Origin: Macrostomum lignano
Taxonomy: Eukaryota
Direction of reading: 5' to 3'
Assembly (NCBI GenBank): GCA_002269645.1
Contig: NIVC01001749.1
Coordinates: 1 to 64,000, forward strand
DNA: 64,000 nucleotides
The notes beneath the pieces are model-generated. The model made no database searches. It had not been told where the DNA came from and was given only the letters and a program-made list of their open reading frames with translations. A program made the position numbers and the translations under genes. Of this stretch, positions 1 to 33,482 are shown piece by piece (within the stretch, counting starts at the first letter, position 1; each line of letters begins with the position of its first letter).

Positions 1-11532
<11,532 letters not shown>

Positions 11533-12513: not shown

Positions 12514-13050
12514 TTTAGCACCAGGGGCTTTAGCACCAGGGGCTTTAGCACCAGGGGCTTTAGCACCAGGGGCTTTAGCACCAGGGGCTTTAGCACCAGG
12601 GGCTTTAGCACCAGGGGCTTTAGCACCAGGGGCTTTAGCACCAGGGGCTTTAGCACCAGGGGCTTTAGCACCAGGGGCTTTAGCACCAGGGGCTTTAGCA
12701 CCAGGGGCTTTAGCACCAGGGGCTTTAGCACCAGGGGCTTTAGCACCAGGGGCTTTAGCACCAGGGGCTTTAGCACCAGGGGCTTTAGCACCAGGGGCTT
12801 TAGCACCAGGGGCTTTAGCACCAGGGGCTTTAGCACCAGGGGCTTTAGCACCAGGGGCTTTAGCACCAGGGGCTTTAGCACCAGGGGCTTTAGCACCAGG
12901 GGCTTTAGCACCAGGGGCGCCAGCACCAGGGGCTTTAGCACCAGGGGCGCCAGCACCAGGGGCTTTAGCACCAGGGGCTTTAGCACCAGGGGCTTTAGCA
13001 CCAGGGGCTTTAGCACCAGGGGCGCCAGCACCAGGGGCGCCAGCACCATC
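12514..13050. repeat. 15-bp minisatellite TTAGCACCAGGGGCT, ~35 copies
   Basis: Near-perfect copies; a GGGGCGCCAGCACC variant occurs at the right end next to the RT fragment. Confidence 0.95.
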
Positions 13051-13410
13051 CGGGGCGCCGGCGTCAGCCAGCAGGCAGTCAACGAAACGCCGAGTGCGGG
13101 CCGCGTCAACTTGTTGCTCCGTCAGCGTCCAGGCCTCGGCGATGTACAATAGAACGTTCTCGACCACCGCCTGGAACAACGCCGCCCTCTGGCGGTCAGG
13201 TAAGGCCTCAGACTACTGCAGGACCGCCCTCACAGAACGAAAGGCAGCCCAGACAAGCCCACGGCGACGCCGCAAATCTTCAACAGATGGCGCCAGGTGA
13301 CTATATGTACACCTGTTGCGAATCCCTCTAGTTTCGCTGATTAAGACCGGACAGTGGGCAAGCCTCAACTGCTGGACATCCTCAGCTAGTCTCTCAAGCA
13401 TTCAGTCAAT
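13040..13410 (-). mobile_element. RTE-like non-LTR retrotransposon RT C-terminal fragment (degenerate)
   Basis: Translation ...[53 protein letters not shown] matches the RTE pattern DI..R.GLAW.AF..L..VW...RLF.A.VESVLLYG.ETWTLT (family pattern from memory). Confidence 0.75.
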
Positions 13411-13723
13411 CACCCTGAACTGCGGAGTCACAGTAGAGAGAGAAACGGGGGTTAGAGAAGGCGATCGATAATTTTATTGCACCCGCACACCACCGTCCTT
13501 GTTGAACTGTATTTTTTGTTTTGTATATTTACGTTTGAAAATTCTGAATAGCTCATATTTCACTACAGCTGTATAAAGTTGCTTGTATTAATAGCTGTTT
13601 GTTATGTAAAAAAGCAACAGTGTTTCATAAAGCTGAATAATTGTTCTATAATACCAACAACAGCAAAACACATGAGTCCAATAAACGTTCAGTGTAGTTT
13701 TGATTGCTCATTTTGCGTCACAT

Positions 13724-14540
13724 TCAGTGCTTGTGATCCGAGTGATGGTGCCCCTGGTGACCAGGCTCGTGCTGATGATGGCCGTGACCGCCCTCGCCGT
13801 GCTGATGATGATGATGCTGCTTGCCAGCCTCCGACTGACAGCAGTCGTTTTTCTGGCAGCAATCGCCGGAGTTGCAATCGCTAGGCGGGCATTTGCACTT
13901 TTCGCCGCACAATTCGGCCGAATGCTTCTGCTGAGTGTCGCCGCATGGCTGGCAGGATTTGTGCTCGGCTTTGCGTGTCGAGGTGGCGCGGTGAATGTAC
14001 ATGTACATTCTATGTTCTAGGAAGGCTATGTACATTCGTTCATTTGCTGCGATGTCTATTTCTCCAACCCTCTAACCCCGCCTACCTGCGTACATTTCTC
14101 CAACCCTCTAACCCAGCCTAGCTTGCGAGCATTTATCTAGCCCTCTAACCCCGCCTAGCCTGCGTAAATTTCTCCAAACCCTCTAACCCCGCCTAGCCTG
14201 CGTAAATTTCTCCAAACCCCCTAACCCCGCCTAGCCTGCGTACATTTCTCCAACCCTCTAACCCAGCCTAGCCTGCGTACATTTATCTAGCCCTCTAACC
14301 CAGCTTAGCCTGCGTACATTTATCTAGCCTCTATCCCCGCCTAGCCTGCGTAATTCTAGCGTAAGTAAACTACTGTACACTCTCTAATTCGTGTACATTC
14401 TGCTAGATAATGCCTAACATCAGTACTTTCATCGACTCTATGTTGTACACTGTTGCTCTCCGTCTTCAATACGCCATCAATACGGCTGATCAAATGCCAT
14501 TTAAAATCGAAACAAGAGTGGATAAATATTACTTACACAT
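13724..14540 (-). CDS. 82-aa metallothionein-like Cys-rich protein with His-rich C-terminal tail
   Basis: Exon 1 CDS ATG-T (14540-14537) followed by GTAAGT; exon 2 13968-13724 after AAG. Joined product: MSEHKSCQPCGDTQQKHSAELCGEKCKCPPSDCNSGDCCQKNDCCQSEAGKQHHHHQHGEGGHGHHQHEPGHQGHHHSDHKH (10 Cys, 17 His, no F/W/Y). The acceptor has a weak pyrimidine tract. Confidence 0.7.
14055..14360. repeat. ~37-bp minisatellite in the metallothionein-like intron
   Basis: Unit ~TTCTCCAACCCTCTAACCCCGCCTAGCCTGCGTACAT. Confidence 0.85.
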
Positions 14541-14579
14541 CTTCACGGAGACTTGTTGAAACAATAATAGATAGCCCGA

Positions 14580-14690
14580 AGATTTGAATTCGAGAGCTCG
14601 AGAATTCGATCTTATAGATGCATGGCAGTCGTTTTCTGATATCCTTGATCGCTTTTATAGACAAGGGTATTGAATTTTAATTGGTCAAAA
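14580..14690 (-). promoter_or_regulatory. Core promoter of the metallothionein-like gene (CCAAT, TATA-like, Inr-like)
   Basis: Minus strand: CCAAT at 14684-14680, CTATAAGA at ~14617-14610, TCAAAT ~25-30 nt further on, ATG ~45 nt beyond that. Confidence 0.5.
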
Positions 14691-15065: not shown

Positions 15066-15125
15066 TGTCTATCTATCTATCTACCTATCTATCTACCTAT
15101 CTATCTATCCATCTATCTATCCATC

Positions 15126-15173
<48 letters not shown>

Positions 15174-15226
15174 CATCTATCTATCCATCTATCTATCTAT
15201 CTATCTATCTATTTATCTATCTATCC

Positions 15227-15284
<58 letters not shown>

Positions 15285-15378
15285 CTATTTATCTATCTAC
15301 CTATCTATCTATCTATCTATCCATCTATCTATCCCTATCTATCTATCTATCTATCCATCTATCTATCTATCTTTCTCC

Positions 15379-15427
<49 letters not shown>

Positions 15428-15476
15428 CATCTATCCATCTATCTATCTATCTATCTACCTATCTATCTATCTGTCT
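15066..15476. repeat. (CTAT)n microsatellite
   Basis: Direct inspection. Confidence 0.95.
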
Positions 15477-15834
15477 AGTGTATGGAAATACATCGAAATG
15501 TATATAAAAATCTAAAAAGTCTGCTCACACTGAACTCAGAATTTGAAGTCACACTCTCCCACTCTACAATTCGATGCCATAGACGCCCCGGCCTCGAATC
15601 GTACGATTCGAAAACAGAAGCCGAAAGTTTATTAGGCTGGATATTAAGACGAAAGTCCAGAGGAAAAAGTGGACGAAGTACAATTCGTACTACGTACATG
15701 TAAAAGTTTTCTTAATTTATATGCAAAACTGCATGACAACCTTAGAAATGAAATTTTTTGACACATGCGTAAATAAAAAAATCTATTGGGAAATCAATCA
15801 TGTTGGCCTTGTCATCAGACAGAAGTCTACGCTC

Positions 15835-17126: not shown

Positions 17127-20100
17127 CTACTTAGGCCGCTGACTGTACTTGTGCCGTATGGTTGTCTCGAGTTCAGCCAGTTGCTGTTCGTCGAGGGCCT
17201 CATTGAAGTTGTCGATGCTAGCTAGGATCTCCGGGTTGCTTTGGAATTCGTAGTACCTGGTTTGTTGGTCACAGGTAGTTGGTTAAGTTCGCGAGTTCGT
17301 GCATAATATAAAGATATACAGATCCAAAAATGGCGGGTAACCTTGGAGCTAAATGGTTGAACACTGAACAGATTGATCTGCCATTCAGGCGGTCCCAAGT
17401 TCGAATCCCAGAAGAGGCGAAATACAATAATTATGGGGCAGATTGTTATTTATGAGTTCGTATATAAAAGATAAGCTACGGGACGAGATTTAGCCCAGTG
17501 GTGTAACGAGAGATTCTGTTAACCGGTAGGTCGCAGGTTCGAATCCCGGTACAGGCAAAATATTTTCTAGAGTTAATAATGATTACATAGTTTGCACATA
17601 AAATGCCGAAAAATTACTATAAGTCACGTGACGAGATTTAGCCCAGTGGTGTAACGAGCGATTCTGTTAACCCGTAGGTCGCAGGTTCGAATCCCGGTAC
17701 AGGCAAAACAATTTTCTAGATTATTTACTACGACATGACAAACATCTCAAATCTCTAATCATAATCTCTAATTTCGACGGTCACGGGTTCGAATCCTAAC
17801 AGCAGCTTGAGTTATTTCTTAGGCACATACTGTTAAAATCACTTACATAGAATTGGCCGAGTAGCGCTTGAATTTGATGCAAAAGTCCAAGCAGTTATAG
17901 GACATCCAGTACTTCCAATAGTTGATCACTGGCCCAACAGCCCGTGCCCGCTCCACCGGATAACTGGCCGGCAATTGTCGGATCTCGTCGTTGCCAATGA
18001 CGCCCTCGTGAATTCTGGTCAGATATTTCAGCACCTCGCCAACGTGAGGCACCAGCGGTGGCTCCGTAGTGCTCATATTGCGAAAGTATTCCCGCGCAAA
18101 TGCGGACTGGTTGGCCAGCTTGCTAGTGAAGTCCTTCAGCTTGCGGCGAACTGAGCGGCCTGCGGTTGAGTGGGGTGTACTTTTATTTATTGCAAATTGC
18201 TACTACTGACACATCACTTATTAGTATCTCACCAGGCCACGGCAGGCGATCCAGGCTAACCAGACACAGCACAATAGCCAGGTGAGAATTGAAATTGTGA
18301 TGCCGCCGCAGCTCTTCGGCCACTTTGCAGAAGAAGCTCATGAAGCGCTGCCGGTCGCGCATTCGATCGGCTGGCCGGCCCAGCACCAGCGTCTTCGCCC
18401 AGAAGCCGAGGCGATTGAAAAAGTTTATAAACGCCTGCAGATTAACAAACTGTTCCCCGGATCTGGCGCGCACGAAGGCCAGGTACTCCTGGGGGATCGG
18501 GGATTACAGAGGGGATTAACACTGTATTCTGTGGATTAACTCACTGTATTCTGGGGATTAACTCACTGTATTCTGGGGATTAAAACACTGTATTCTGGGG
18601 ATTAACTCACTGTATTCTGGGGATTAACTCACTGTATTCTGGGGATTAACTCACTGTATTCTGGGGATTAACTCACTGTATTCTGGGGATTAACACACTG
18701 TATTCTGGGGATTAACACACTGTATTCTGGGGATTAACACGCTGTATTCTGGGGATTAACTCACTGTATTCTGGGGATTAACACACTGTATTCTGGGGAT
18801 TAACACACTGTATTCTGGGGATTAACACACTGTATTCTGGGGATTAACTCACTGTATTCTGGGGATTAACACACTGTATTCTGGGGATTAACTCACTGTA
18901 TTCTGGGAATTAACACGCTGTATTCTGGGGATTAACTCACTGTATTCTGGGGATTAACACACTGTATTCTGGGGATTAACACACTGTATTCTGGGGATTA
19001 ACACGCTGTATTCTGGGGATTAACACACTGTATTCTGGGGATTAACACGCTGTATTCTGGGGATTAACTCACTGTATTCTGGGGATTAACTCACTGTATT
19101 CTGGGAATTAACTCACTGTATTCTGGGGATTAACTCACTGTATTCTGGGGATTAACTCATTGTATTCTGGGGATTAACTCACTGTATTCTGGGGATTAAC
19201 ACGCTGTATTCTGGGGATTAACACACTGTATTCTGGGGATTAACACACTGTATTCTGGGGATTAACTCATTGTATTCTGGGGATTAACTCACTGTATTCT
19301 GGGGATTAACACGCTGTATTCTGGGGATTAACACACTGTATTCTGGGGATTAACACACTGTATTCTGGGGATTAACTCACTGTATTCTGGGGATTAACAC
19401 GCTGTATTCTGGGGATTAACACACTGTATTCTGGGGATTAACACGCTGTATTCTGGGGATTAACTCACTGTATTCTGGGGATTAACACACTGTATCATGG
19501 GGATTAACACGCTGTATTCTGGGGATTAACACACTGTATTCTGGGGATTAACACGCTGTATTCTGGGGATTAACTCACTGTATTCTGGAGATTAACACAC
19601 TGTATCATGGGGATTAACACACTGTATTCTGGGGATTAACACACTGTATTCTGGGGATTAACACACTGTATTCTGGGGATTAACACACTGGAATCTGGGG
19701 ACTAACACACTGTATTCTGGGGATTAACACACTGTATCCTGGGGATTAACTCACTGTATTCTGGGAGATTACCGCACTGTATTGTAGGGATTAAAACTAC
19801 ATTTATGGGATTAAGGCACTATAACCTTAGGTTTAACACACCTGGACTCTACTCTTGGGAGTAGAGCAATCTCACCTGAATATCGATTCTCCTATACAAC
19901 CTGGCATCCATCAAGGTGATTTGCTCGGCCACCTGTCTGGGACTGAATTCCACTATGTTGCGTCGTTTTATCGACAAAGAGGACGACAACGACAGAGTGG
20001 ATTTTGCTTTTTCGCTCTCTTCTTCGTCTCGCTGCTGCTGCTGCTGAATGCGAAGGCAGTGCAGAGCGCTGCCGAGGATCTGCACTTCGGCCAGATTACC

Positions 20101-23100: not shown

Positions 23101-26100
23101 GGTTTATTCATGCTGTTCAAGCATGAATCCCTGTAGGCAGTTACTAGCTAAGCAAATTTATAGCTAAAACCAGTTTGCGCAAGTTCCAGCAGCTTCCAGC
23201 ATGCTAATGCCAGTACAGTACACTGTGCTTATACGGAATTGAAATTGCAATGTTTAATTATAATAGCAATAAATTATGCCGATAGCTACTAAAGTGCAAA
23301 TAGTCACAAGCACTAAAATTCTGGATACGATAAAAACGCGACATTGCGACTTTACACATAGATTGGGAGATGTTAGGCCTAGTATTGAGTCAACGAACGA
23401 CTAAGCAAGCCCAGCTAGAAATTAGGTAGGCACAAGGATACACCATAGTCACAGGACTTACAGAAGGTAGAGATGGCGAAGGGGTGAAAGGGAAAATGGA
23501 GATTAGATAGGGAAATGAGAGGAAGAGAAGGGGAGAGACTACTACTAAGGGGATTAACAATTCGAAAAAAAGTTTTTATGATGCTTTTAATAGGGCGATC
23601 ATTGATTTCTATGAAGATTGCATCATAACTACAGCATATGAGCAGAAAGGAGATGTGCGAATAAACAATCAGGGCAACCCACTACACACAATCAAGAGAA
23701 GCAAATTGGCTTTAGCAGCAACCAGATGATAACACGGCCTAGCAGATAGGAAAGAGACACAGACTTATACAAGACTAAACCCAATTAGTGTACCTGCAGT
23801 GCCCAAAGTCGCACTGGCGGACTATATAGGAAAAGCTATCGGATAGTTCGTAAAATGAAGTCAACTGTCTGTCTGTCCAACAACAAGAAAACTCTTCATA
23901 TAACACAGGCTCAAAATGATGTTATACACATAGGAGAACCCTGCGCAGTTCAGACACGCGATAATACGAGCAGAAAAGCTTTTGAGTGCGTGCCTTTGCA
24001 TGTCTATTGCATGTTCGCTTATTAGATGGACTCAGCGACTTCCTGTCACCCCGGTAAGGAAAAACTGCGACAAGCGACATCCGGCGTCCACAAAAAATGA
24101 CGACAATTTTCTTTTATCAAAAAAAGACCCAAACTTGAACTTTTTTAGTAGATTCCTTTGCGGCTCTTTCAGACGTTTCAGTTCGAGTCTGGAGACTCAA
24201 TTGATTTGAAGAGATTATTGAAAAAAGATAATACAGCTTAATTAGCAGTGCACGCAGGACAACTCGAGCACTTTCGGCGCTTTTCTGATCCCGAATTTTG
24301 GTACTTTTAAGCTCATTTTTTGCACTCATAAATTGCTCAGATGGTGTTCTTAAATGCCTGCCTTTGCCGCTCGTTGACTTTTTAGCAATCAAATATTCCG
24401 TTTTAAAATATTTCATACGAATGGTTGTTTTGGATTTTGGCACTACATATAGTAATTATGGCCCTACACACTAAAGTATTATTATATTGGCACTCTACAT
24501 ATGGTCGTCTTGACAATCTACATATAGTCATCTTGGCACTCGTCATATGGTCATTTTGGCACTATATATTGAAGTATTATCATCTTGGCACTCTACATAT
24601 GGTCATCTTTGCTCTTTAAATGTGTTCATCTTGGTACTGCATATTTTCAATAGCAACATTATGAACTCGAAACCAGTTCCGTTCTTTCAGCAGAAAAATC
24701 TACATCTCCAGAAATCGAAAACCATACGTCAAGCAAGTCAGCTGTTGCACCATACCATATCATCTCTGAACGTGCGCCTATCTATACAGTATGTAGTAAA
24801 AAAGGAAACGTATTCGGCAGAACAGGAAGTATCACTTATTCAGCTCTCTTTGGTAACGGCACAGTTCACTCTCTACCAAGAGGCTTACAGCTGAAGATAC
24901 GGAATGGTCGTAGACAGACAGACGCATCTGACACGCCTTGCCCTTAACTGACCCCTAAAAGTTAGCGCTAGAGGGGAAGGGAAACGCCGCCACCAAAAAG
25001 GAAATCAATTTCGCAAGCCGCAAAGGAAGATGAATAAATATAAAATGGGCGCGCTTTAATACTGCGCCCAATCAATGAATTAGTGCGTGAGCGAGCGTGT
25101 GTGCGTAATGCAAGTTTACTATAAATGTCAGTTCTACATAAGTATACGTCAGTGACTCATTGCCCTGGCAACGGCCATACACTTTTGGCGATAGACTTTG
25201 CATAGCATCTAGCCTTATTCTGGGCTATAGGTTACAGCGAAAATGATCGGACAGATCGAGAAAAACGTCATTTTTTATGACGGGCACAAAACATTCGGGT
25301 ATGAAATATTCTAAGCAGTCTCAAATACCAATGAATAGTCTCGCTCAGACAATAAACTCAATATTCGATGCACAGACGCAACAATTTCAATCTGATCCCA
25401 TGCAGTGACACAACATTCTCACTTTGATTCCATGCCGTGACACAATAGTCTCACTTTGATTCCATGCCGTGACACAATATTCTCCCTTTAGTTCGATGCA
25501 GTAACACAATATTCTCACTAAGTTCGATACAGTGACACAATATTCTCACTAAGTTCGATACAGTGACACAATATTCTCACTAAGTTCGATGCAGTGACAC
25601 AATATTCTCACTCTGATCCGATGCAGTGACACAATATTCTCACTAAGTTCGATGCAGTGACACAATATTCTCACTCTGATCCGATGCAGTGACACAATAT
25701 TCTCCCTTCAGTTCGATGCAGTGACACAATATTCTCACTCTGATCCGATGCAGTGACACAATATGCCCACTCTGATCCGATGCAGTGACACAATATTCTC
25801 ACTCTGATCCGATGCAGTGACACAATATTCTCCCTTCAGTTCGATGCAGTGACACAATATTCTCCCTTTAGTTCGATGCAGTGACACAATATTCTCACTA
25901 AGTTCGATGCAGTGACACAATATTCTCACTCTGATCGGATGCAGTGACACAATATTCTCACTCTGATCCGATGCAGTGACACAATATTGGCGCTTTAGTA
26001 CGATGCAGTGACACAATATTCTCACTCTGATCCGATACAGTGACACAATATTCTCACTCTGATCCGATGCAGTGACACAATATTCTCACTCTGATCCGAT

Positions 26101-29100
26101 GCAGTGACACAATATTCTCACTCTGATCCGATGAAGTGACACAATATTCTCACTCTGATCCGATGCAGTGACACAATATTCTCACTCTGATCCGATGCAG
26201 TGACACAATATTGGCGCTTTAGTACGATGCAGTGAAACAATATTCTCACTCTGATCCGATACAGTGACACAATACTCTCACTCTGATCCGATGCAGTGAC
26301 ACAATATTCTCACTCTGATCCGATGCAGTGACACAATATTGGCGCTTTAGTACGATGCAGTGAAACAATATTCTCACTCTGATCCGATACAGTGACACAA
26401 TACTCTCACTCTGATCTGATGCAGTGACACAATATTCTCACTCTGATCCGATGAAGTGACACAATATTCTCACTCTGATCCGTTACAGTGACACAATATT
26501 CTCCCTTTAGTTCGATGCAGTGACACAATATTCTCACTCTGATCCGATACAGTGACACAATATTCTCACTCTGATCCGATGCAGTGACACAATATTCTCA
26601 CTTTAGTTCGATGTAGTGACACAATATTCTCATTCATCCGATGTAGAGACACTTCTCTAGACACTCTTAAGCAACGTACAGACACGATAATCTCACTGTG
26701 ATCCAAAATTGAGATAGCGATAGTAGTATAATGTCTGTAGATAAAATATAGGACATTGCCCGATGCTACATAGCAGCCGGCAATCTCTACTGCAATGCTG
26801 CTATGATTAACGACACGCACAAGCATAGCAAATCATATTATGAGGGAAGTATTATGCAATGTGCGTATTGAGCAGTTAGTGGCCTCGACTGAGTACAAAA
26901 CACTACAAAGTACAAGAGATCGAGCAGAAAAAGTAGAGAAATTTTGTTCTCATATTTAACCGCACGCAATAAATCAATATTTGGGATCGGATAGGGGGCA
27001 TTTTTATAACGAATAAACTCGCTCTTTTTCCATCACTTCTTCTTGAGCATATTTGAGCATATATAAGCACGAACACAGTTCACCTTCTGAAAGAGCCATC
27101 TAGCCAGTCAGTCAGGCAGGTTTAACTTCCAGATCAGGCCACTTAACTCATAAGTCAAAGTGGATTTTTTTCTTGAAAAATAAGCAGGCAGCCCGCCAAG
27201 CAGAACGATATGAAATATTAATCTGGTCAAAGCTAAGCGATAAAAGTCACGCTTCAGCAGTATTGATGAAAATTCTGCTATTTTATTAAGGATTTGGGAG
27301 CCATTTATTTTTCAAAAAGGCTCGAGACAAAGGAATTATAAGGAACTCCATCATTTTGCTAGTTGCCAAGCTAAACCCAGGTTTTCGAAAAAATTCCGAA
27401 CCTTTAGTTGAGTCGCGGAAATCTCACTCCAGATGAAGCTTAAGACACGGAAATCTAACCCCCTAGATCCAATGCAGAGCCATGGAAATCTCACTTTAGA
27501 TCCATAGCAGAGACAAGGAAATCTCACCCTAGATCCATAGCAGAGACAAGGAAATCTCACCCTAGATCCATAGCAGAGACAAGAAAATCTCACCCTAGAT
27601 CCATAGCAGAGACACGGAAATCTCACCCTAGATCTAATGAATAGGCACGGAAATTCCATCCTAGATCCAATGGATGGACACGGAAATCTCACCCTTGACC
27701 CAATTAATAGACACGGAAATCCCATCCTAGATCCAATGGATGGACAAAGAAATCTCACCATAGATCCAACGCAGAGACACTGAAATCTCACCCTAGACCT
27801 ATAGCAGAGACAAAGAAATCTCACCCTAGACCCAACACAGAGATACGGAAATCTGACCCTAGATCAAATGCAGAGATACGGAAATCTCACCCTAGATCAA
27901 ATGCAGAGACACGGAAATCTCACCCTAGATCAAATGCAGAGACACGGAAATCTCACCCTAGACCCAATTAATAGACACGGAAATCCCATCCTAGATCCAA
28001 TGGATGGACACGGAAATCTCACCCTAGATCCAACGCAGAGACACTGAAATCTCACCCTAGACCTATAGCAGAGACAAAGAAATCTCACCCTAGACACAAC
28101 ACAGAGATACGGAAATCTCACCCTAGACCTATAGCAGAGACAAAGAAATCTCACCATAGATCCAACGCAGAGACACTGAAATCTCACCCTAGACCTATAG
28201 CAGAGACAAAGAAATCTCACCCTAGACACAACACAGAGATACGGAAATCTCACCCTAGATCAAATGCAGAGACACGGAAAATATCAAATAGACACAAAAC
28301 CATACTTTAAAGTTTCAGAAAAGATATTACATTACTTAGACTATTTAGCAACGGAAAATGTATTAGCGTAATTGAGAAAATTTCTCAGACCAAAGGTCGG
28401 AATCAGGCGCAATTACGTAAACAGGCATAAACTAAACTCAGAACTGACAGCGCAAATTACGAGAAACCAGATTCATTTCGTAGAGCTACTTTAGTAAAAA
28501 AGGGTAATGGATGGAGACAGATATACAGATAGCATATGGTAACTGGCAGAATCAGCCATGGCAGTAGGAAATGCGGCATGACTGAATGCGGTCAGATATA
28601 AACAGGTCAGTGGCAATATTTTCACATAACTTTTAACTCCGAAGCGCATTGGTTTATTAATAATTTTATAGTTTTGTGTCACAGGTCTATCTATATCTTG
28701 GGCTCTTGGTATCATATAATTCAATTATAATAAAACTGAAGCCTTTATTTATTTTAATGCGTTTCCGGCACTTATTTTCCATTGGTGAGCCACTCTATAA
28801 AATGAGATTCTGCAATTCTTATTGAGGCTTCGGGGGAGATTCTCAGTGAGGGTTCAGGGGCGATTCTCAGTGAGGGTTCAGGGGCGATTCTTAGTGAGGG
28901 TTCAGGGGCGATTCTTAGTGAGGGTTCAGGGGCGATTCTTAGTGAGGCTTCGGGGCAATTCTTAGTGAGGGTTCAGGGGCGATTCTCAGTGAGGCGTCAG
29001 GGGCGATTCTTAGTGAGGGTTCAGGGGCGATTCTTAGTGAGGGCTTGGGGGCGATTGTTAGTGAGGGTTCAGGGGCGATTCTCAGTGAGGCGTCAGGGGC

Positions 29101-32029: not shown

Positions 32030-33482
32030 TGGCGGAGAGGGGGTAGTGGGATAGAGGTTAGTGAGATTGGGGGTAGCGGGTAGGGGTAACGGTAGGGGTA
32101 GTGAGACTAGGGGTAGTTTGATAGGGGGCAGCGGGTAGGGGGTAGCGGGATAGGGGTAGTGAGTCTAGGGGTAGTGAGATAGGGGGTAGTGGTTTAGGGG
32201 GTAGCGGGATAGGGGTAGTGAGATAGGGGGTAGTGGGTAGCGGGTAGCGGGATAGGGGTAGTGAGTCTAGGGGTAGTGAGATAGGGGGCAGCGGGTAGGG
32301 GGTAGCGGGATAGGGGTAGTGAGTCTAGGGGTAGTGAGATAGGGGGTAGTGGTTTAGGGGGTAGCGGGATAGGGGTAGTGAGATAGGGGGTAGTGGGTAG
32401 CGGGTAGCGGGATAGGGGTAGTGAGTCTAGGGTAGTGAGATAGGGGGCAGCGGGTAGGGGGTAGCGGGATAGGGGTAGTGAGTCTAGGGGTAGTGAGATA
32501 GGGGGTAGTGGTTTAGGGGGTAGCGGGATAGGGGTAGTGAGATAGGGGGTAGTGGGTAGCGGGTAGCGGGATAGGGGTAGTGAGTCTAGGGGTAGTGAGA
32601 TAGGGGGCAGCGGGTAGGGGGTAGCGGGATAGGGGTAGTGAGTCTAGGGGTAGTGAGATAGGGGGTAGTGGTTTAGGGGGTAGCGGGATAGGGGTAGTGA
32701 GATAGGGGGTAGTGGGTAGCGGGTAGCGGGATAGGGGTAGTGAGTCTAGGGTAGTGAGATAGGGGGTAGTGGGTAGGGGTAGCGGGATAGGGGTAGTGAG
32801 TCTAGGGGTAGTGAGATAGGGGGTAGTGGTTTAGGGGGTAGCGGGATAGGGGTAGTGAGATAGGGGGTAGTGGTTTAGGGGGTAGTGAGATAGGGGGTAG
32901 TGGGTAGGGGGTAGCGGGATAGGGGTAGTGAGTCTAGGGGTAGTGAGATAGGGGGTAGTGGGTAGGGGGTAGCGGGATAGGGGTAGTGAGTCTAGGGGTA
33001 GTTGGATAGGGGGGTAGCGGGTAGGGGGAAGTGGGATAGGGGGTAGTGGGATAGGGGTAGAGAGATAGGGGGTAGTGGGTAGGGGGTAGCGGGATAGGGG
33101 TAGTGAGTCTAGGGGTAGTTGGATAGGGGGTAGTTGGATAGGGGGTAGCGGGATAGGGGTAGTGAGATAGGGGGTAGTGGGTAGGGGGTAGCGGGATAGG
33201 GGTAGTGAGATAGGGGGTAGTGGGTAGGGGGTAGCGGGATAGGGGTAGTGAGTCTAGGGGTAGTTGGATAGGGGGTAGCGGGTAGGGGGAAGTGGGATAG
33301 GGGGTAGTGGGATAGGGGTAGAGAGATAGGGGGTAGTAGGTAGGGGGTAGTGGGATAGGGGTAGTGAGTCTAGGGGTAGTTGGATAGGGGGGTAGCGGGT
33401 AGGGGGAAGTGGGATAGGGGGTAGTGGGATAGGGGTAGAGAGATAGGGGGTAGTGGGTAGGGGGTAGTGGGATAGGGGGTAG
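32030..33482. repeat. G-rich minisatellite with ~160-bp higher-order period
   Basis: GGGG(G)TAG-based units; the marker ATAGGGGGCA recurs at 32121, 32281, 32440, 32600. Confidence 0.92.

What the first reader, a model, noticed from the sequence alone, without database searches (positions are those of the whole stretch)
13724..14690. Hidden two-exon gene for a bipartite Cys-rich plus poly-His metal-binding microprotein
Seen: a 4-nt first coding exon (ATG-T|GTAAGT at 14540-14531) splices in phase to 13968-13724, giving an 82-aa protein. It has an N-terminal CxxC...CxC...CC...CC domain (10 Cys), a C-terminal tail with 15 His in 30 residues, and no aromatic residues. CCAAT and TATA-like elements sit at sensible spacing upstream, with AATAAA about 250 nt downstream. 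The ORF track misses it because of the tiny first exon. Established: small size, Cys clusters, lack of aromatics and a very short first exon typify metallothioneins; His-tract proteins such as Helicobacter Hpn bind Ni/Zn/Cu. Inference: a hybrid MT/His-tract chelator with two metal-selective modules. I do not know of such a form described in flatworms.
Basis: partly seen in the sequence, partly recalled or inferred. Interest (0 to 1): 0.78.

Follow-up and report, generated by a model that had tools for sequence, protein, structure and literature searches.

The report
Flatworm Cys-plus-polyHis orphan microprotein gene
The two-exon gene is real but already sits in GenBank as an unnamed Macrostomum lignano protein; its make-up suggests a small metal-binding protein of a form not described in flatworms, but nothing beyond composition supports that yet.

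Summary
ATGT|GTAAGT at 14540-14531 joined to 13968-13724 gives the 82-aa protein described: 10 Cys in the first 45 residues, 15 His in the last 30, no aromatic residues. The gene is not hidden. The window is Macrostomum lignano contig NIVC01001749.1, and the protein is identical to GenBank PAA64456.1 (Mlig034277.g1, "hypothetical protein"). That annotation came from RNA-seq transcript assembly and spans exactly 13724-14540.

A second genomic copy, g2, keeps the donor, the acceptor and the frame. It lacks the alternative unspliced ORF, so only the spliced model is shared.

The metallothionein/His-tract reading rests on composition alone:
- No Pfam metallothionein family matches, and no PDB sequence does.
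- No real homologue turned up among 1.84 billion representative proteins.
- Metal-response elements are not enriched upstream.
- I found no expression data.
- The two copies differ by three non-synonymous changes, one synonymous change and one His-codon indel, so they give no sign of purifying selection.

My best reading is a lineage-restricted, cytosolic, disordered metal-binding microprotein, with thiolate ligands in the Cys domain and imidazole ligands in the tail (about 0.5). The main rival is a young orphan ORF with no selected function. Interest is moderate.

The parts
14680..14684 (-). CCAAT motif, 144 nt upstream of the ATG
   Evidence: Identical in the second copy. Function not tested.
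14653..14659 (-). TATAAAA motif, 119 nt upstream of the ATG
   Evidence: Identical in copy g2. The g2 transcript model starts only 18-20 nt after its first T, so its role as the core promoter is plausible but not shown.
14537..14639 (-). Exon 1: a 5'UTR of at least 99 nt plus the coding ATGT at 14540-14537. It holds a 3-codon uORF at 14623-14612.
   Evidence: The 5'-partial CDS of paralogue PAA84756.1 reads through the equivalent UTR into MSDHKSC.... uORF. Purine at -3 of the ATG.
13969..14536 (-). Intron of 568 nt, GTAAGT...AAAG, containing a 37-nt x 8 minisatellite at 14058-14352
   Evidence: It differs from copy g2 by 13.6% plus 9 indel events. The donor fits the M. lignano GT[G/A]AG consensus (PMC8629364). 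The acceptor is AAG rather than the commoner CAG.
13724..13968 (-). Exon 2 coding part: residues 2-82 and the TGA stop. Cys domain at about 13968-13815, His-rich tail at 13814-13727.
   Evidence: 100% identical to PAA64456.1. GC 0.59, against 0.33-0.47 in the flanks.
13473..13723 (-). 3'UTR up to the AATAAA at 13478-13473
   Evidence: 0.4% divergence from copy g2. The poly(A) site itself was not seen.

Best explanation
This is a genuine, transcribed, cis-spliced two-exon gene of Macrostomum lignano, Mlig034277.g1 (PAA64456.1). It encodes a 9-kDa protein that is very hydrophilic, has no aromatic residues and has no signal peptide.

The likely mechanism, which is inferred and not shown, is as follows. 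The apo-protein is disordered in the cytosol. The ten cysteines (CxxC, CxC, CC, CC) would close around a small metal-thiolate cluster, roughly 3-4 Zn/Cd or more Cu(I), as in a single metallothionein domain. The 30-residue tail, half of it His, would add imidazole ligands for borderline ions (Zn, Ni, Cu(II), Co). The whole protein would then act as a buffer or sink for metal ions with two kinds of ligand.

It appears to be a lineage-restricted invention and not a member of any recognised metallothionein sequence family. Its His tail changes by CAT-triplet slippage.
For: Shown:
- The protein is identical to GenBank PAA64456.1, and the annotated span is identical.
- That annotation was built only from RNA-seq (StringTie, TACO, a mapped de novo transcriptome, TransDecoder) and excludes models overlapping repeats (PMC5730564).
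- The second copy's transcript-derived CDS runs from the 5'UTR exon across the same junction.
- The second copy has no ATG-started unspliced ORF, only a 63-aa TTG ORF.
- Composition and motifs are as described, with no hydrophobic segment.
- It is the only non-repeat Cys-rich reading frame in the 64 kb.
- Exon 2 has GC 0.59 and His codons are mixed (9 CAC, 8 CAT), so the tail is not a pure microsatellite.
- AlphaFold gives pLDDT 58.8 and pTM 0.29, compatible with a fold that depends on metal or is disordered.

From the literature:
- His ligands in a C-terminal insert tune metal selectivity in C. elegans MTL-1 (PMC11134313).
- Small His-rich proteins bind Ni in Helicobacter (PMC4671568, PMC5312948).
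Against: - No metallothionein family of Pfam matches, even at E<=10.
- No PDB sequence relative.
- Exhaustive HMMER of the Cys domain against 1.84 billion representatives finds only itself and one spurious repeat translation. Conservation of the Cys pattern across species is therefore untested.
- Cys is only 12% of the protein and 19% of the N-terminal domain, which is low for a metallothionein.
- His at 21% is atypical for a metallothionein.
- There is no TGCRCNC within 1.5 kb upstream, and no enrichment at either locus.
- The two copies differ in exon 2 by 3 non-synonymous and 1 synonymous substitutions plus a 3-nt indel. Exon 2 is no better conserved than the 3'UTR (1.6% against 0.4%).
- No expression, localisation or metal-response data were found for Mlig034277.
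Confidence: 0.5

Rival explanations
1. A young orphan gene with no selected function. The locus is transcribed and spliced, but the open frame is a by-product of GC-rich, stop-poor, partly triplet-repeat sequence. The protein is either not made or does nothing specific.
For: - No homologue anywhere.
- Between the two copies non-synonymous changes outnumber synonymous 3 to 1, with a CAT slippage indel.
- Exon 2 is not better conserved than the 3'UTR.
- A second sense frame is open across the whole exon and a long antisense frame is open too, so stop codons are scarce here.
- De novo ORFs with repeat-derived His motifs are reported as common in Drosophila (bioRxiv 10.64898/2026.08.19.745823).
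Against: - Ten Cys arranged in four classic metal-binding motifs within 39 residues, with no aromatic residue, is not what random GC-rich sequence gives. It is the only such non-repeat frame in the window.
- 9 of 10 Cys codons are TGC, and His codons are mixed, not repeat-derived.
- The ATG has a purine at -3, and the split codon keeps the frame in both copies.
- The two copies are too similar for dN/dS to tell either way.
Confidence: 0.27
2. A Ni/Zn storage protein or metallochaperone in the manner of bacterial Hpn, or of the HypB and SlyD tails. The His tract would be the main working part, delivering or storing an essential metal, not detoxifying.
For: The tail is 50% His. Small His-rich Ni-binding proteins exist. 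From my own knowledge, not tested here: Hpn and the SlyD tail also mix His runs with Cys pairs.
Against: No sequence relation to any of them. No client enzyme or partner gene sits nearby; the only annotated neighbour is a RasGEF gene. The Cys domain is larger than a chaperone's delivery motif.
Confidence: 0.12
3. A structural or material protein hardened by metal-His cross-links, as in His-rich jaw or glue proteins, for example in the stylet or the adhesive organs.
For: The tail is rich in His and Gly. His-rich proteins give zinc-dependent curing of mussel glue (PMC13022425, listed).
Against: No signal peptide or hydrophobic segment. The protein is very small, has no repeats and has no Tyr/DOPA chemistry. 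I have no localisation data.
Confidence: 0.05
4. A different product is made from this DNA. The candidates are the unspliced 103-aa ORF (13724-14035), an 86-aa protein in the other open frame started by the ATG of a trans-spliced leader at the 13968 acceptor, or the antisense 106-aa ORF.
For: All three frames are open in this window. The M. lignano spliced leader ends in ATG (PMC8629364).
Against: - Copy g2 has a 19-nt deletion and a 2-nt insertion just upstream of the acceptor and lacks the 103-aa ORF.
- Both annotated transcripts use the cis exon 1.
- The GT-AG orientation fixes the sense strand.
- I have no evidence of leader reads at this acceptor.
Confidence: 0.04

Closest known systems
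Metallothioneins, operational class. The closest in layout are single-domain forms with about 10 Cys, and C. elegans MTL-1 with its His-bearing C-terminal insert.
   Same: Small (9 kDa). No aromatic residues. Cys in CxxC, CxC and CC motifs. No signal peptide. Predicted to be unstructured without metal. In MTL-1, His residues in a C-terminal insert form a Zn-specific His3Cys site that shifts metal selectivity (PMC11134313).
   Different: No sequence match to any Pfam metallothionein family. Cys is 12% overall and 19% in the domain, which is on the low side. The tail has 15 His in 30 residues, against 3 liganding His in MTL-1. No MRE-type promoter signal. Metal binding is untested.
Helicobacter Hpn and Hpn-2 (small His-rich Ni-binding proteins)
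   Same: Microprotein size, very high His content, cytosolic. From my own knowledge, not tested here: Hpn also carries Cys pairs.
   Different: Bacterial and unrelated in sequence. Here the His are confined to the C-terminal 30 residues and follow a separate Cys-rich domain.
Repeat-derived His-motif de novo ORFs proposed as zinc chelators in Drosophila (bioRxiv 10.64898/2026.08.19.745823)
   Same: Lineage-restricted, disordered, His-rich. The His tract changes by repeat slippage; a CAT insertion distinguishes the two copies.
   Different: Those ORFs are reported to lack CxxC-type Cys motifs and to come from (CA)n repeats. This protein has an elaborate Cys domain and mixed CAC/CAT codons.

Membership tests
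Metallothionein (operational definition) | Low molecular weight (under about 10 kDa) | tested here: met
   82 aa, 9,066 Da.
Metallothionein (operational definition) | High Cys content, typically about 15-33% | tested here: inconclusive
   10 of 82 is 12% overall. 10 of 52 is 19% in the N-terminal domain.
Metallothionein (operational definition) | Cys arranged as C-x-C, C-C and C-x-x-C motifs | tested here: met
   C7xxC10, C26xC28, C38C39 and C44C45.
Metallothionein (operational definition) | No aromatic residues, and few or no His | tested here: inconclusive
   0 F/W/Y, so that half is met. 17 His is 21%, so the other half is not met.
Metallothionein (operational definition) | Metal-thiolate clusters and high metal content | not testable with these tools
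   Needs recombinant protein with ESI-MS, ICP or spectroscopy.
Recognised metallothionein sequence families (Pfam models) | Significant match to a family profile | tested here: not met
   hmmscan against Pfam-A at E<=10. The full protein hits only ZIP at E=7.8, and the Cys domain alone hits nothing. No PDB metallothionein at E<=10.
MTF-1-regulated metallothionein genes | Several MRE cores (TGCRCNC) in the proximal promoter | tested here: not met
   None within 1.5 kb upstream of the ATG. L001 has 1 against 4.4 expected, and L002 has 4 against 4.6 expected.
MTF-1-regulated metallothionein genes | Transcript induced by Cd, Zn or Cu | not testable with these tools
   No metal-exposure transcriptome of M. 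lignano was found. The gene id is absent from the supplements I searched.
Hpn-type His-rich Ni-binding proteins | Sequence homology to Hpn or Hpn-2 | tested here: not met
   No hit in the word-index search with the whole protein, tail included, or in the PDB search. The exhaustive search used the Cys domain only, so the His tail itself was not searched exhaustively.
Hpn-type His-rich Ni-binding proteins | His-rich throughout, with Ni binding | tested here: inconclusive
   The tail is 50% His but the protein is 21% overall. Ni binding cannot be tested here.

The most novel reading that the evidence does not exclude
Mlig034277 is the founding member of a flatworm (Macrostomorpha) metallothionein family with a bipartite build: a thiolate-cluster domain fused to a poly-His module that gives a second metal preference. 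This would be in a phylum whose parasitic members are reported to lack metallothionein genes (PMC3561135).
Probability: 0.25. Interest if true: 0.6.

Novelty: new variant of a known kind. Interest (0 to 1): 0.38.

Why it matters
Metallothioneins have barely been described at the molecular level in flatworms. Authors working on schistosomes state that parasitic flatworms appear to have no metallothionein genes and propose phytochelatin synthase as the main metal defence instead (PMC3561135).

M. lignano is being promoted as a marine toxicology model (PMC11641670, listed). It also has transgenesis and RNAi. A validated metal-binding microprotein, with its compact promoter, would therefore be a useful biomarker or reporter.

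It would also be a clean case for asking how a Cys cluster and a poly-His tract share out different metals. If instead it proves to be a functionless young ORF, it is an ordinary annotation entry.

Tried and rejected
- Homology. The word-index search of 5.8 billion proteins with the full protein gave only its own cluster. Exhaustive HMMER with the Cys domain gave itself plus P0003, a 1,067-aa translated repeat matched on 'CSTPPSDANS'. I rejected that as spurious.
- Families and structures. Pfam and PDB searches were empty. The single-sequence AlphaFold model was low-confidence, so I ran no fold search.
- Promoter. The MRE, ARE, HSE and GATA motif scan gave nothing usable.
- Literature. There were no hits for the gene id in full texts or in the held supplements of PMC5730564, PMC5816591, PMC5946080 and PMC12896417. 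PMC12801592 has no supplements held. No paper links M. lignano to a metallothionein gene.
- Selection. I considered dN/dS between the two copies, but four substitutions are too few. A Fisher test of exon against 3' flank gives p=0.22.
- Other copies. There are none in the window. The intron minisatellite is not dispersed elsewhere in the window.
- Orthologues. I could not search other Macrostomum genomes or transcriptomes. The similarity-searchable DNA collections here are viral, metagenomic or prokaryotic, and the assemblies that include eukaryotes can only be queried by exact protein.

Full report
**What is there**

On the minus strand the sequence reads ...GTGAAG ATGT|GTAAGTAATATT... at 14540-14531 and ...CGACACGCAAAG|CCGAGCACAAATCC... 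at 13968. Joining ATGT to 13968-13724 gives a 249-nt frame. It encodes:

MSEHKSCQPCGDTQQKHSAELCGEKCKCPPSDCNSGDCCQKNDCCQSEAGKQHHHHQHGEGGHGHHQHEPGHQGHHHSDHKH*

- Ten Cys, at residues 7, 10, 22, 26, 28, 33, 38, 39, 44 and 45.
- 15 His in the last 30 residues, and 17 in all.
- No Phe, Trp or Tyr.

The protein is 9.07 kDa with pI 6.5 and GRAVY -1.72. Its most hydrophobic 9-residue window scores below zero, so there is no signal peptide or membrane segment.

I scanned all six frames of the window for 40-residue stop-free stretches with at least 8 Cys or 12 His. Apart from this exon, only translated simple repeats turned up. tBLASTn finds no second copy in the window.

**It is an annotated gene, not a hidden one**

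A search of 5.8 billion proteins returned one cluster. Its representative is 100% identical over all 82 residues: NCBI PAA64456.1 / UniRef A0A267ESM6, [quoted passage not shown]. The encoding contig is NIVC01001749.1 of assembly GCA_002269645.1. The gene occupies 13724-14540 of that record, so the window is the first 64 kb of that contig. Only the ATGT|GT...AG|CC junction can produce Met-Ser-Glu from this DNA.

The GenBank annotation of this assembly was derived from RNA-seq alone. The pipeline used STAR mapping, StringTie, TACO, mapping of a de novo transcriptome, and TransDecoder. Non-coding and repeat-overlapping models were removed (PMC5730564). The junction therefore has transcript support, although I could not look at the reads myself.

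**A second copy confirms the splice**

The cluster's other member is PAA84756.1 (Mlig034277g2, 116 aa, marked partial), on contig NIVC01000363.1. Its sequence is SEDDCHASIRSHSRALEFKFSGYLLLFQQVSVR-MSDHKSCKPCGD... The first part is the in-frame translation of the 5'UTR exon, continuing across the same junction into exon 2. This shows that exon 1 is a UTR exon of at least 99 nt in which only ATGT is coding.

Divergence between the two loci, by segment:

| Segment | Substitutions | Indel events |
|---|---|---|
| Upstream (14840-14660) | 5.0% | 0 |
| TATA box to ATGT (14659-14537) | 5.7% | 0 |
| Intron | 13.6% | 9 |
| Exon 2 coding part | 1.6% | 1 |
| 3'UTR to AATAAA | 0.4% | 0 |

The donor and acceptor are identical in both copies. 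Just upstream of the acceptor, g2 has a 19-nt deletion and a 2-nt insertion. These remove the in-frame ATGs of the window's 103-aa unspliced ORF (13724-14035). In g2 the Cys/His frame has no ATG start without splicing; only a 63-aa TTG ORF remains. Only the spliced model is shared.

Both loci lie downstream of a RasGEF gene on the same strand. They are duplicates of a chromosomal block, in a genome known to be recently duplicated and redundantly assembled.

**What the two copies say about selection**

They say very little. Exon 2 differs by E3D, Q8K, G64R, one synonymous change and one inserted CAT (His) codon. Non-synonymous changes are therefore not depleted. The exon is no better conserved than the 3'UTR, and the difference between them is not significant (p=0.22). 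The His tail evidently changes by triplet slippage. It is not a plain microsatellite, though, since its codons are 9 CAC and 8 CAT interspersed with Gly, Gln and Glu.

**Tests of the metallothionein / His-tract reading**

- Composition fits a metal-binding protein. It is small, has no aromatic residues, and carries CxxC, CxC, CC and CC motifs plus a natural poly-His tract.
- No profile or sequence match. hmmscan against Pfam-A at E<=10 gives only a meaningless ZIP hit for the full protein, and nothing for the Cys domain alone. phmmer against all PDB sequences at E<=10 gives one chance hit at E=1.1.
- No homologue. HMMER with the 50-residue Cys domain read every one of 1.84 billion representative proteins. 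It found itself and one hit at E=4e-4, which is a translated repeat with no Cys pattern. The protein is an orphan as far as these databases reach. Other Macrostomum species are probably not represented in them.
- No MRE signal. The MTF-1 response element core TGCRCNC is absent from the 1.5 kb upstream of the ATG. It is at or below chance across both loci.
- Uninformative structure model. AlphaFold without an alignment gives pLDDT 58.8 and pTM 0.29. That fits a fold that is disordered or depends on metal, but it proves nothing.
- No expression data. I found no study that mentions the gene, and no metal-exposure expression data for this species.

**Most likely mechanism**

I commit, at about 0.5, to a cytosolic metal-buffering or sequestering microprotein:
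- The Cys domain would fold around a thiolate cluster. Ten thiolates suit roughly 3-4 divalent ions or more Cu(I).
- The His tail would supply imidazole ligands for Zn, Ni, Cu(II) or Co.

That His ligands in a C-terminal appendage can set metal preference in a metallothionein has been shown for C. elegans MTL-1, where a His3Cys site favours Zn (PMC11134313). Small His-rich proteins that bind Ni are known in Helicobacter.

Every step from sequence to metal binding here is inference. What is shown is the gene model and its transcription.

**Rivals**

- Young orphan ORF without selected function (0.27). In favour: no homologue, no depletion of non-synonymous changes, and scarce stop codons. A second sense frame is open through the whole exon and a long antisense ORF is also open. 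Against: the ordered Cys motifs and the frame-preserving split codon.
- Hpn-like storage or chaperone role (0.12). This is a variant of the main idea.
- Structural His-metal cross-linked material (0.05). This is unlikely without a signal peptide.
- Other products of the same DNA (0.04). This is contradicted by copy g2 and by the annotated transcripts.

**Comparison with what is known, and novelty**

The protein works like, or at least looks like, a metallothionein with an oversized His module. It is not a member of any recognised metallothionein sequence family, because that feature was tested and not met.

The gene model itself is already public. What would be new is the functional class in a flatworm. 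Schistosome researchers state that parasitic flatworms appear to lack metallothionein genes (PMC3561135), and I found no molecular description of one in M. lignano.

I rate it a possible new variant of a known kind, of moderate interest. It is cheap to test in an organism with RNAi and transgenesis, but it currently rests on composition alone.

Noticed in passing
window 13708-13968 (-): A second sense frame is open across the whole of exon 2. The M. lignano spliced leader ends in ATG (PMC8629364). Trans-splicing to the 13968 acceptor would start an 86-aa Ala/Ser/Thr/Ile-rich ORF (MPSTNPASHAATL...ECDAK, stop at 13710-13708). I have no evidence that this happens.
   Followed up: partly
window 13700-14020 (+); L002 5572-5925 (-): A hydrophobic 106-aa ORF lies antisense to exon 2 and is kept as 117 aa in the second copy. 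It is probably a by-product of the polar, GC-rich sense codons. The GT-AG intron fixes the sense strand as minus.
   Followed up: partly
window 14612-14623 (-): A three-codon uORF (ATG CAT CTA TAA) sits in the 5'UTR, out of frame with the main ATG. The second copy keeps it as ATG CGT CTA TAA.
   Followed up: no
window 14639-14659 (-): The 5'-partial CDS of copy g2 begins 99 nt before the ATG, so its transcript model starts only 18-20 nt after the first T of TATAAAA. An in-frame TAA lies inside the TATA box (14657-14655). That may be why g1 was called complete and g2 partial. The start site is unresolved.
   Followed up: partly
window 14058-14352: A 37-nt x 8 minisatellite lies inside the intron. 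It is also present, with copy differences, in the second locus, and is not found elsewhere in the window.
   Followed up: yes
window, whole (e.g. 5136-6405, 12514-13038, 15068-15477, 18511-19794, 25366-26652, 32034-33482): The window is densely packed with micro- and minisatellite arrays, some over 1 kb and strongly strand-skewed. GC skew is 0.73 at 32-34 kb. Many of the long 'ORFs' in the list are translations of these arrays.
   Followed up: no
window 13100-13400 (-): ORF fragments such as ...[15 protein letters not shown]... look like remnants of a retroelement reverse transcriptase just downstream of the gene's poly(A) signal. They were not checked against a family library. This stretch is nearly identical in the second locus as far as the alignment reaches.
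   Followed up: no
window >=17127 (-); L002 1-1694: A 955-aa RasGEF-domain gene ends 2.6 kb (g1) or 3.3 kb (g2) upstream on the same strand, so synteny is conserved between the two copies.
   Followed up: no
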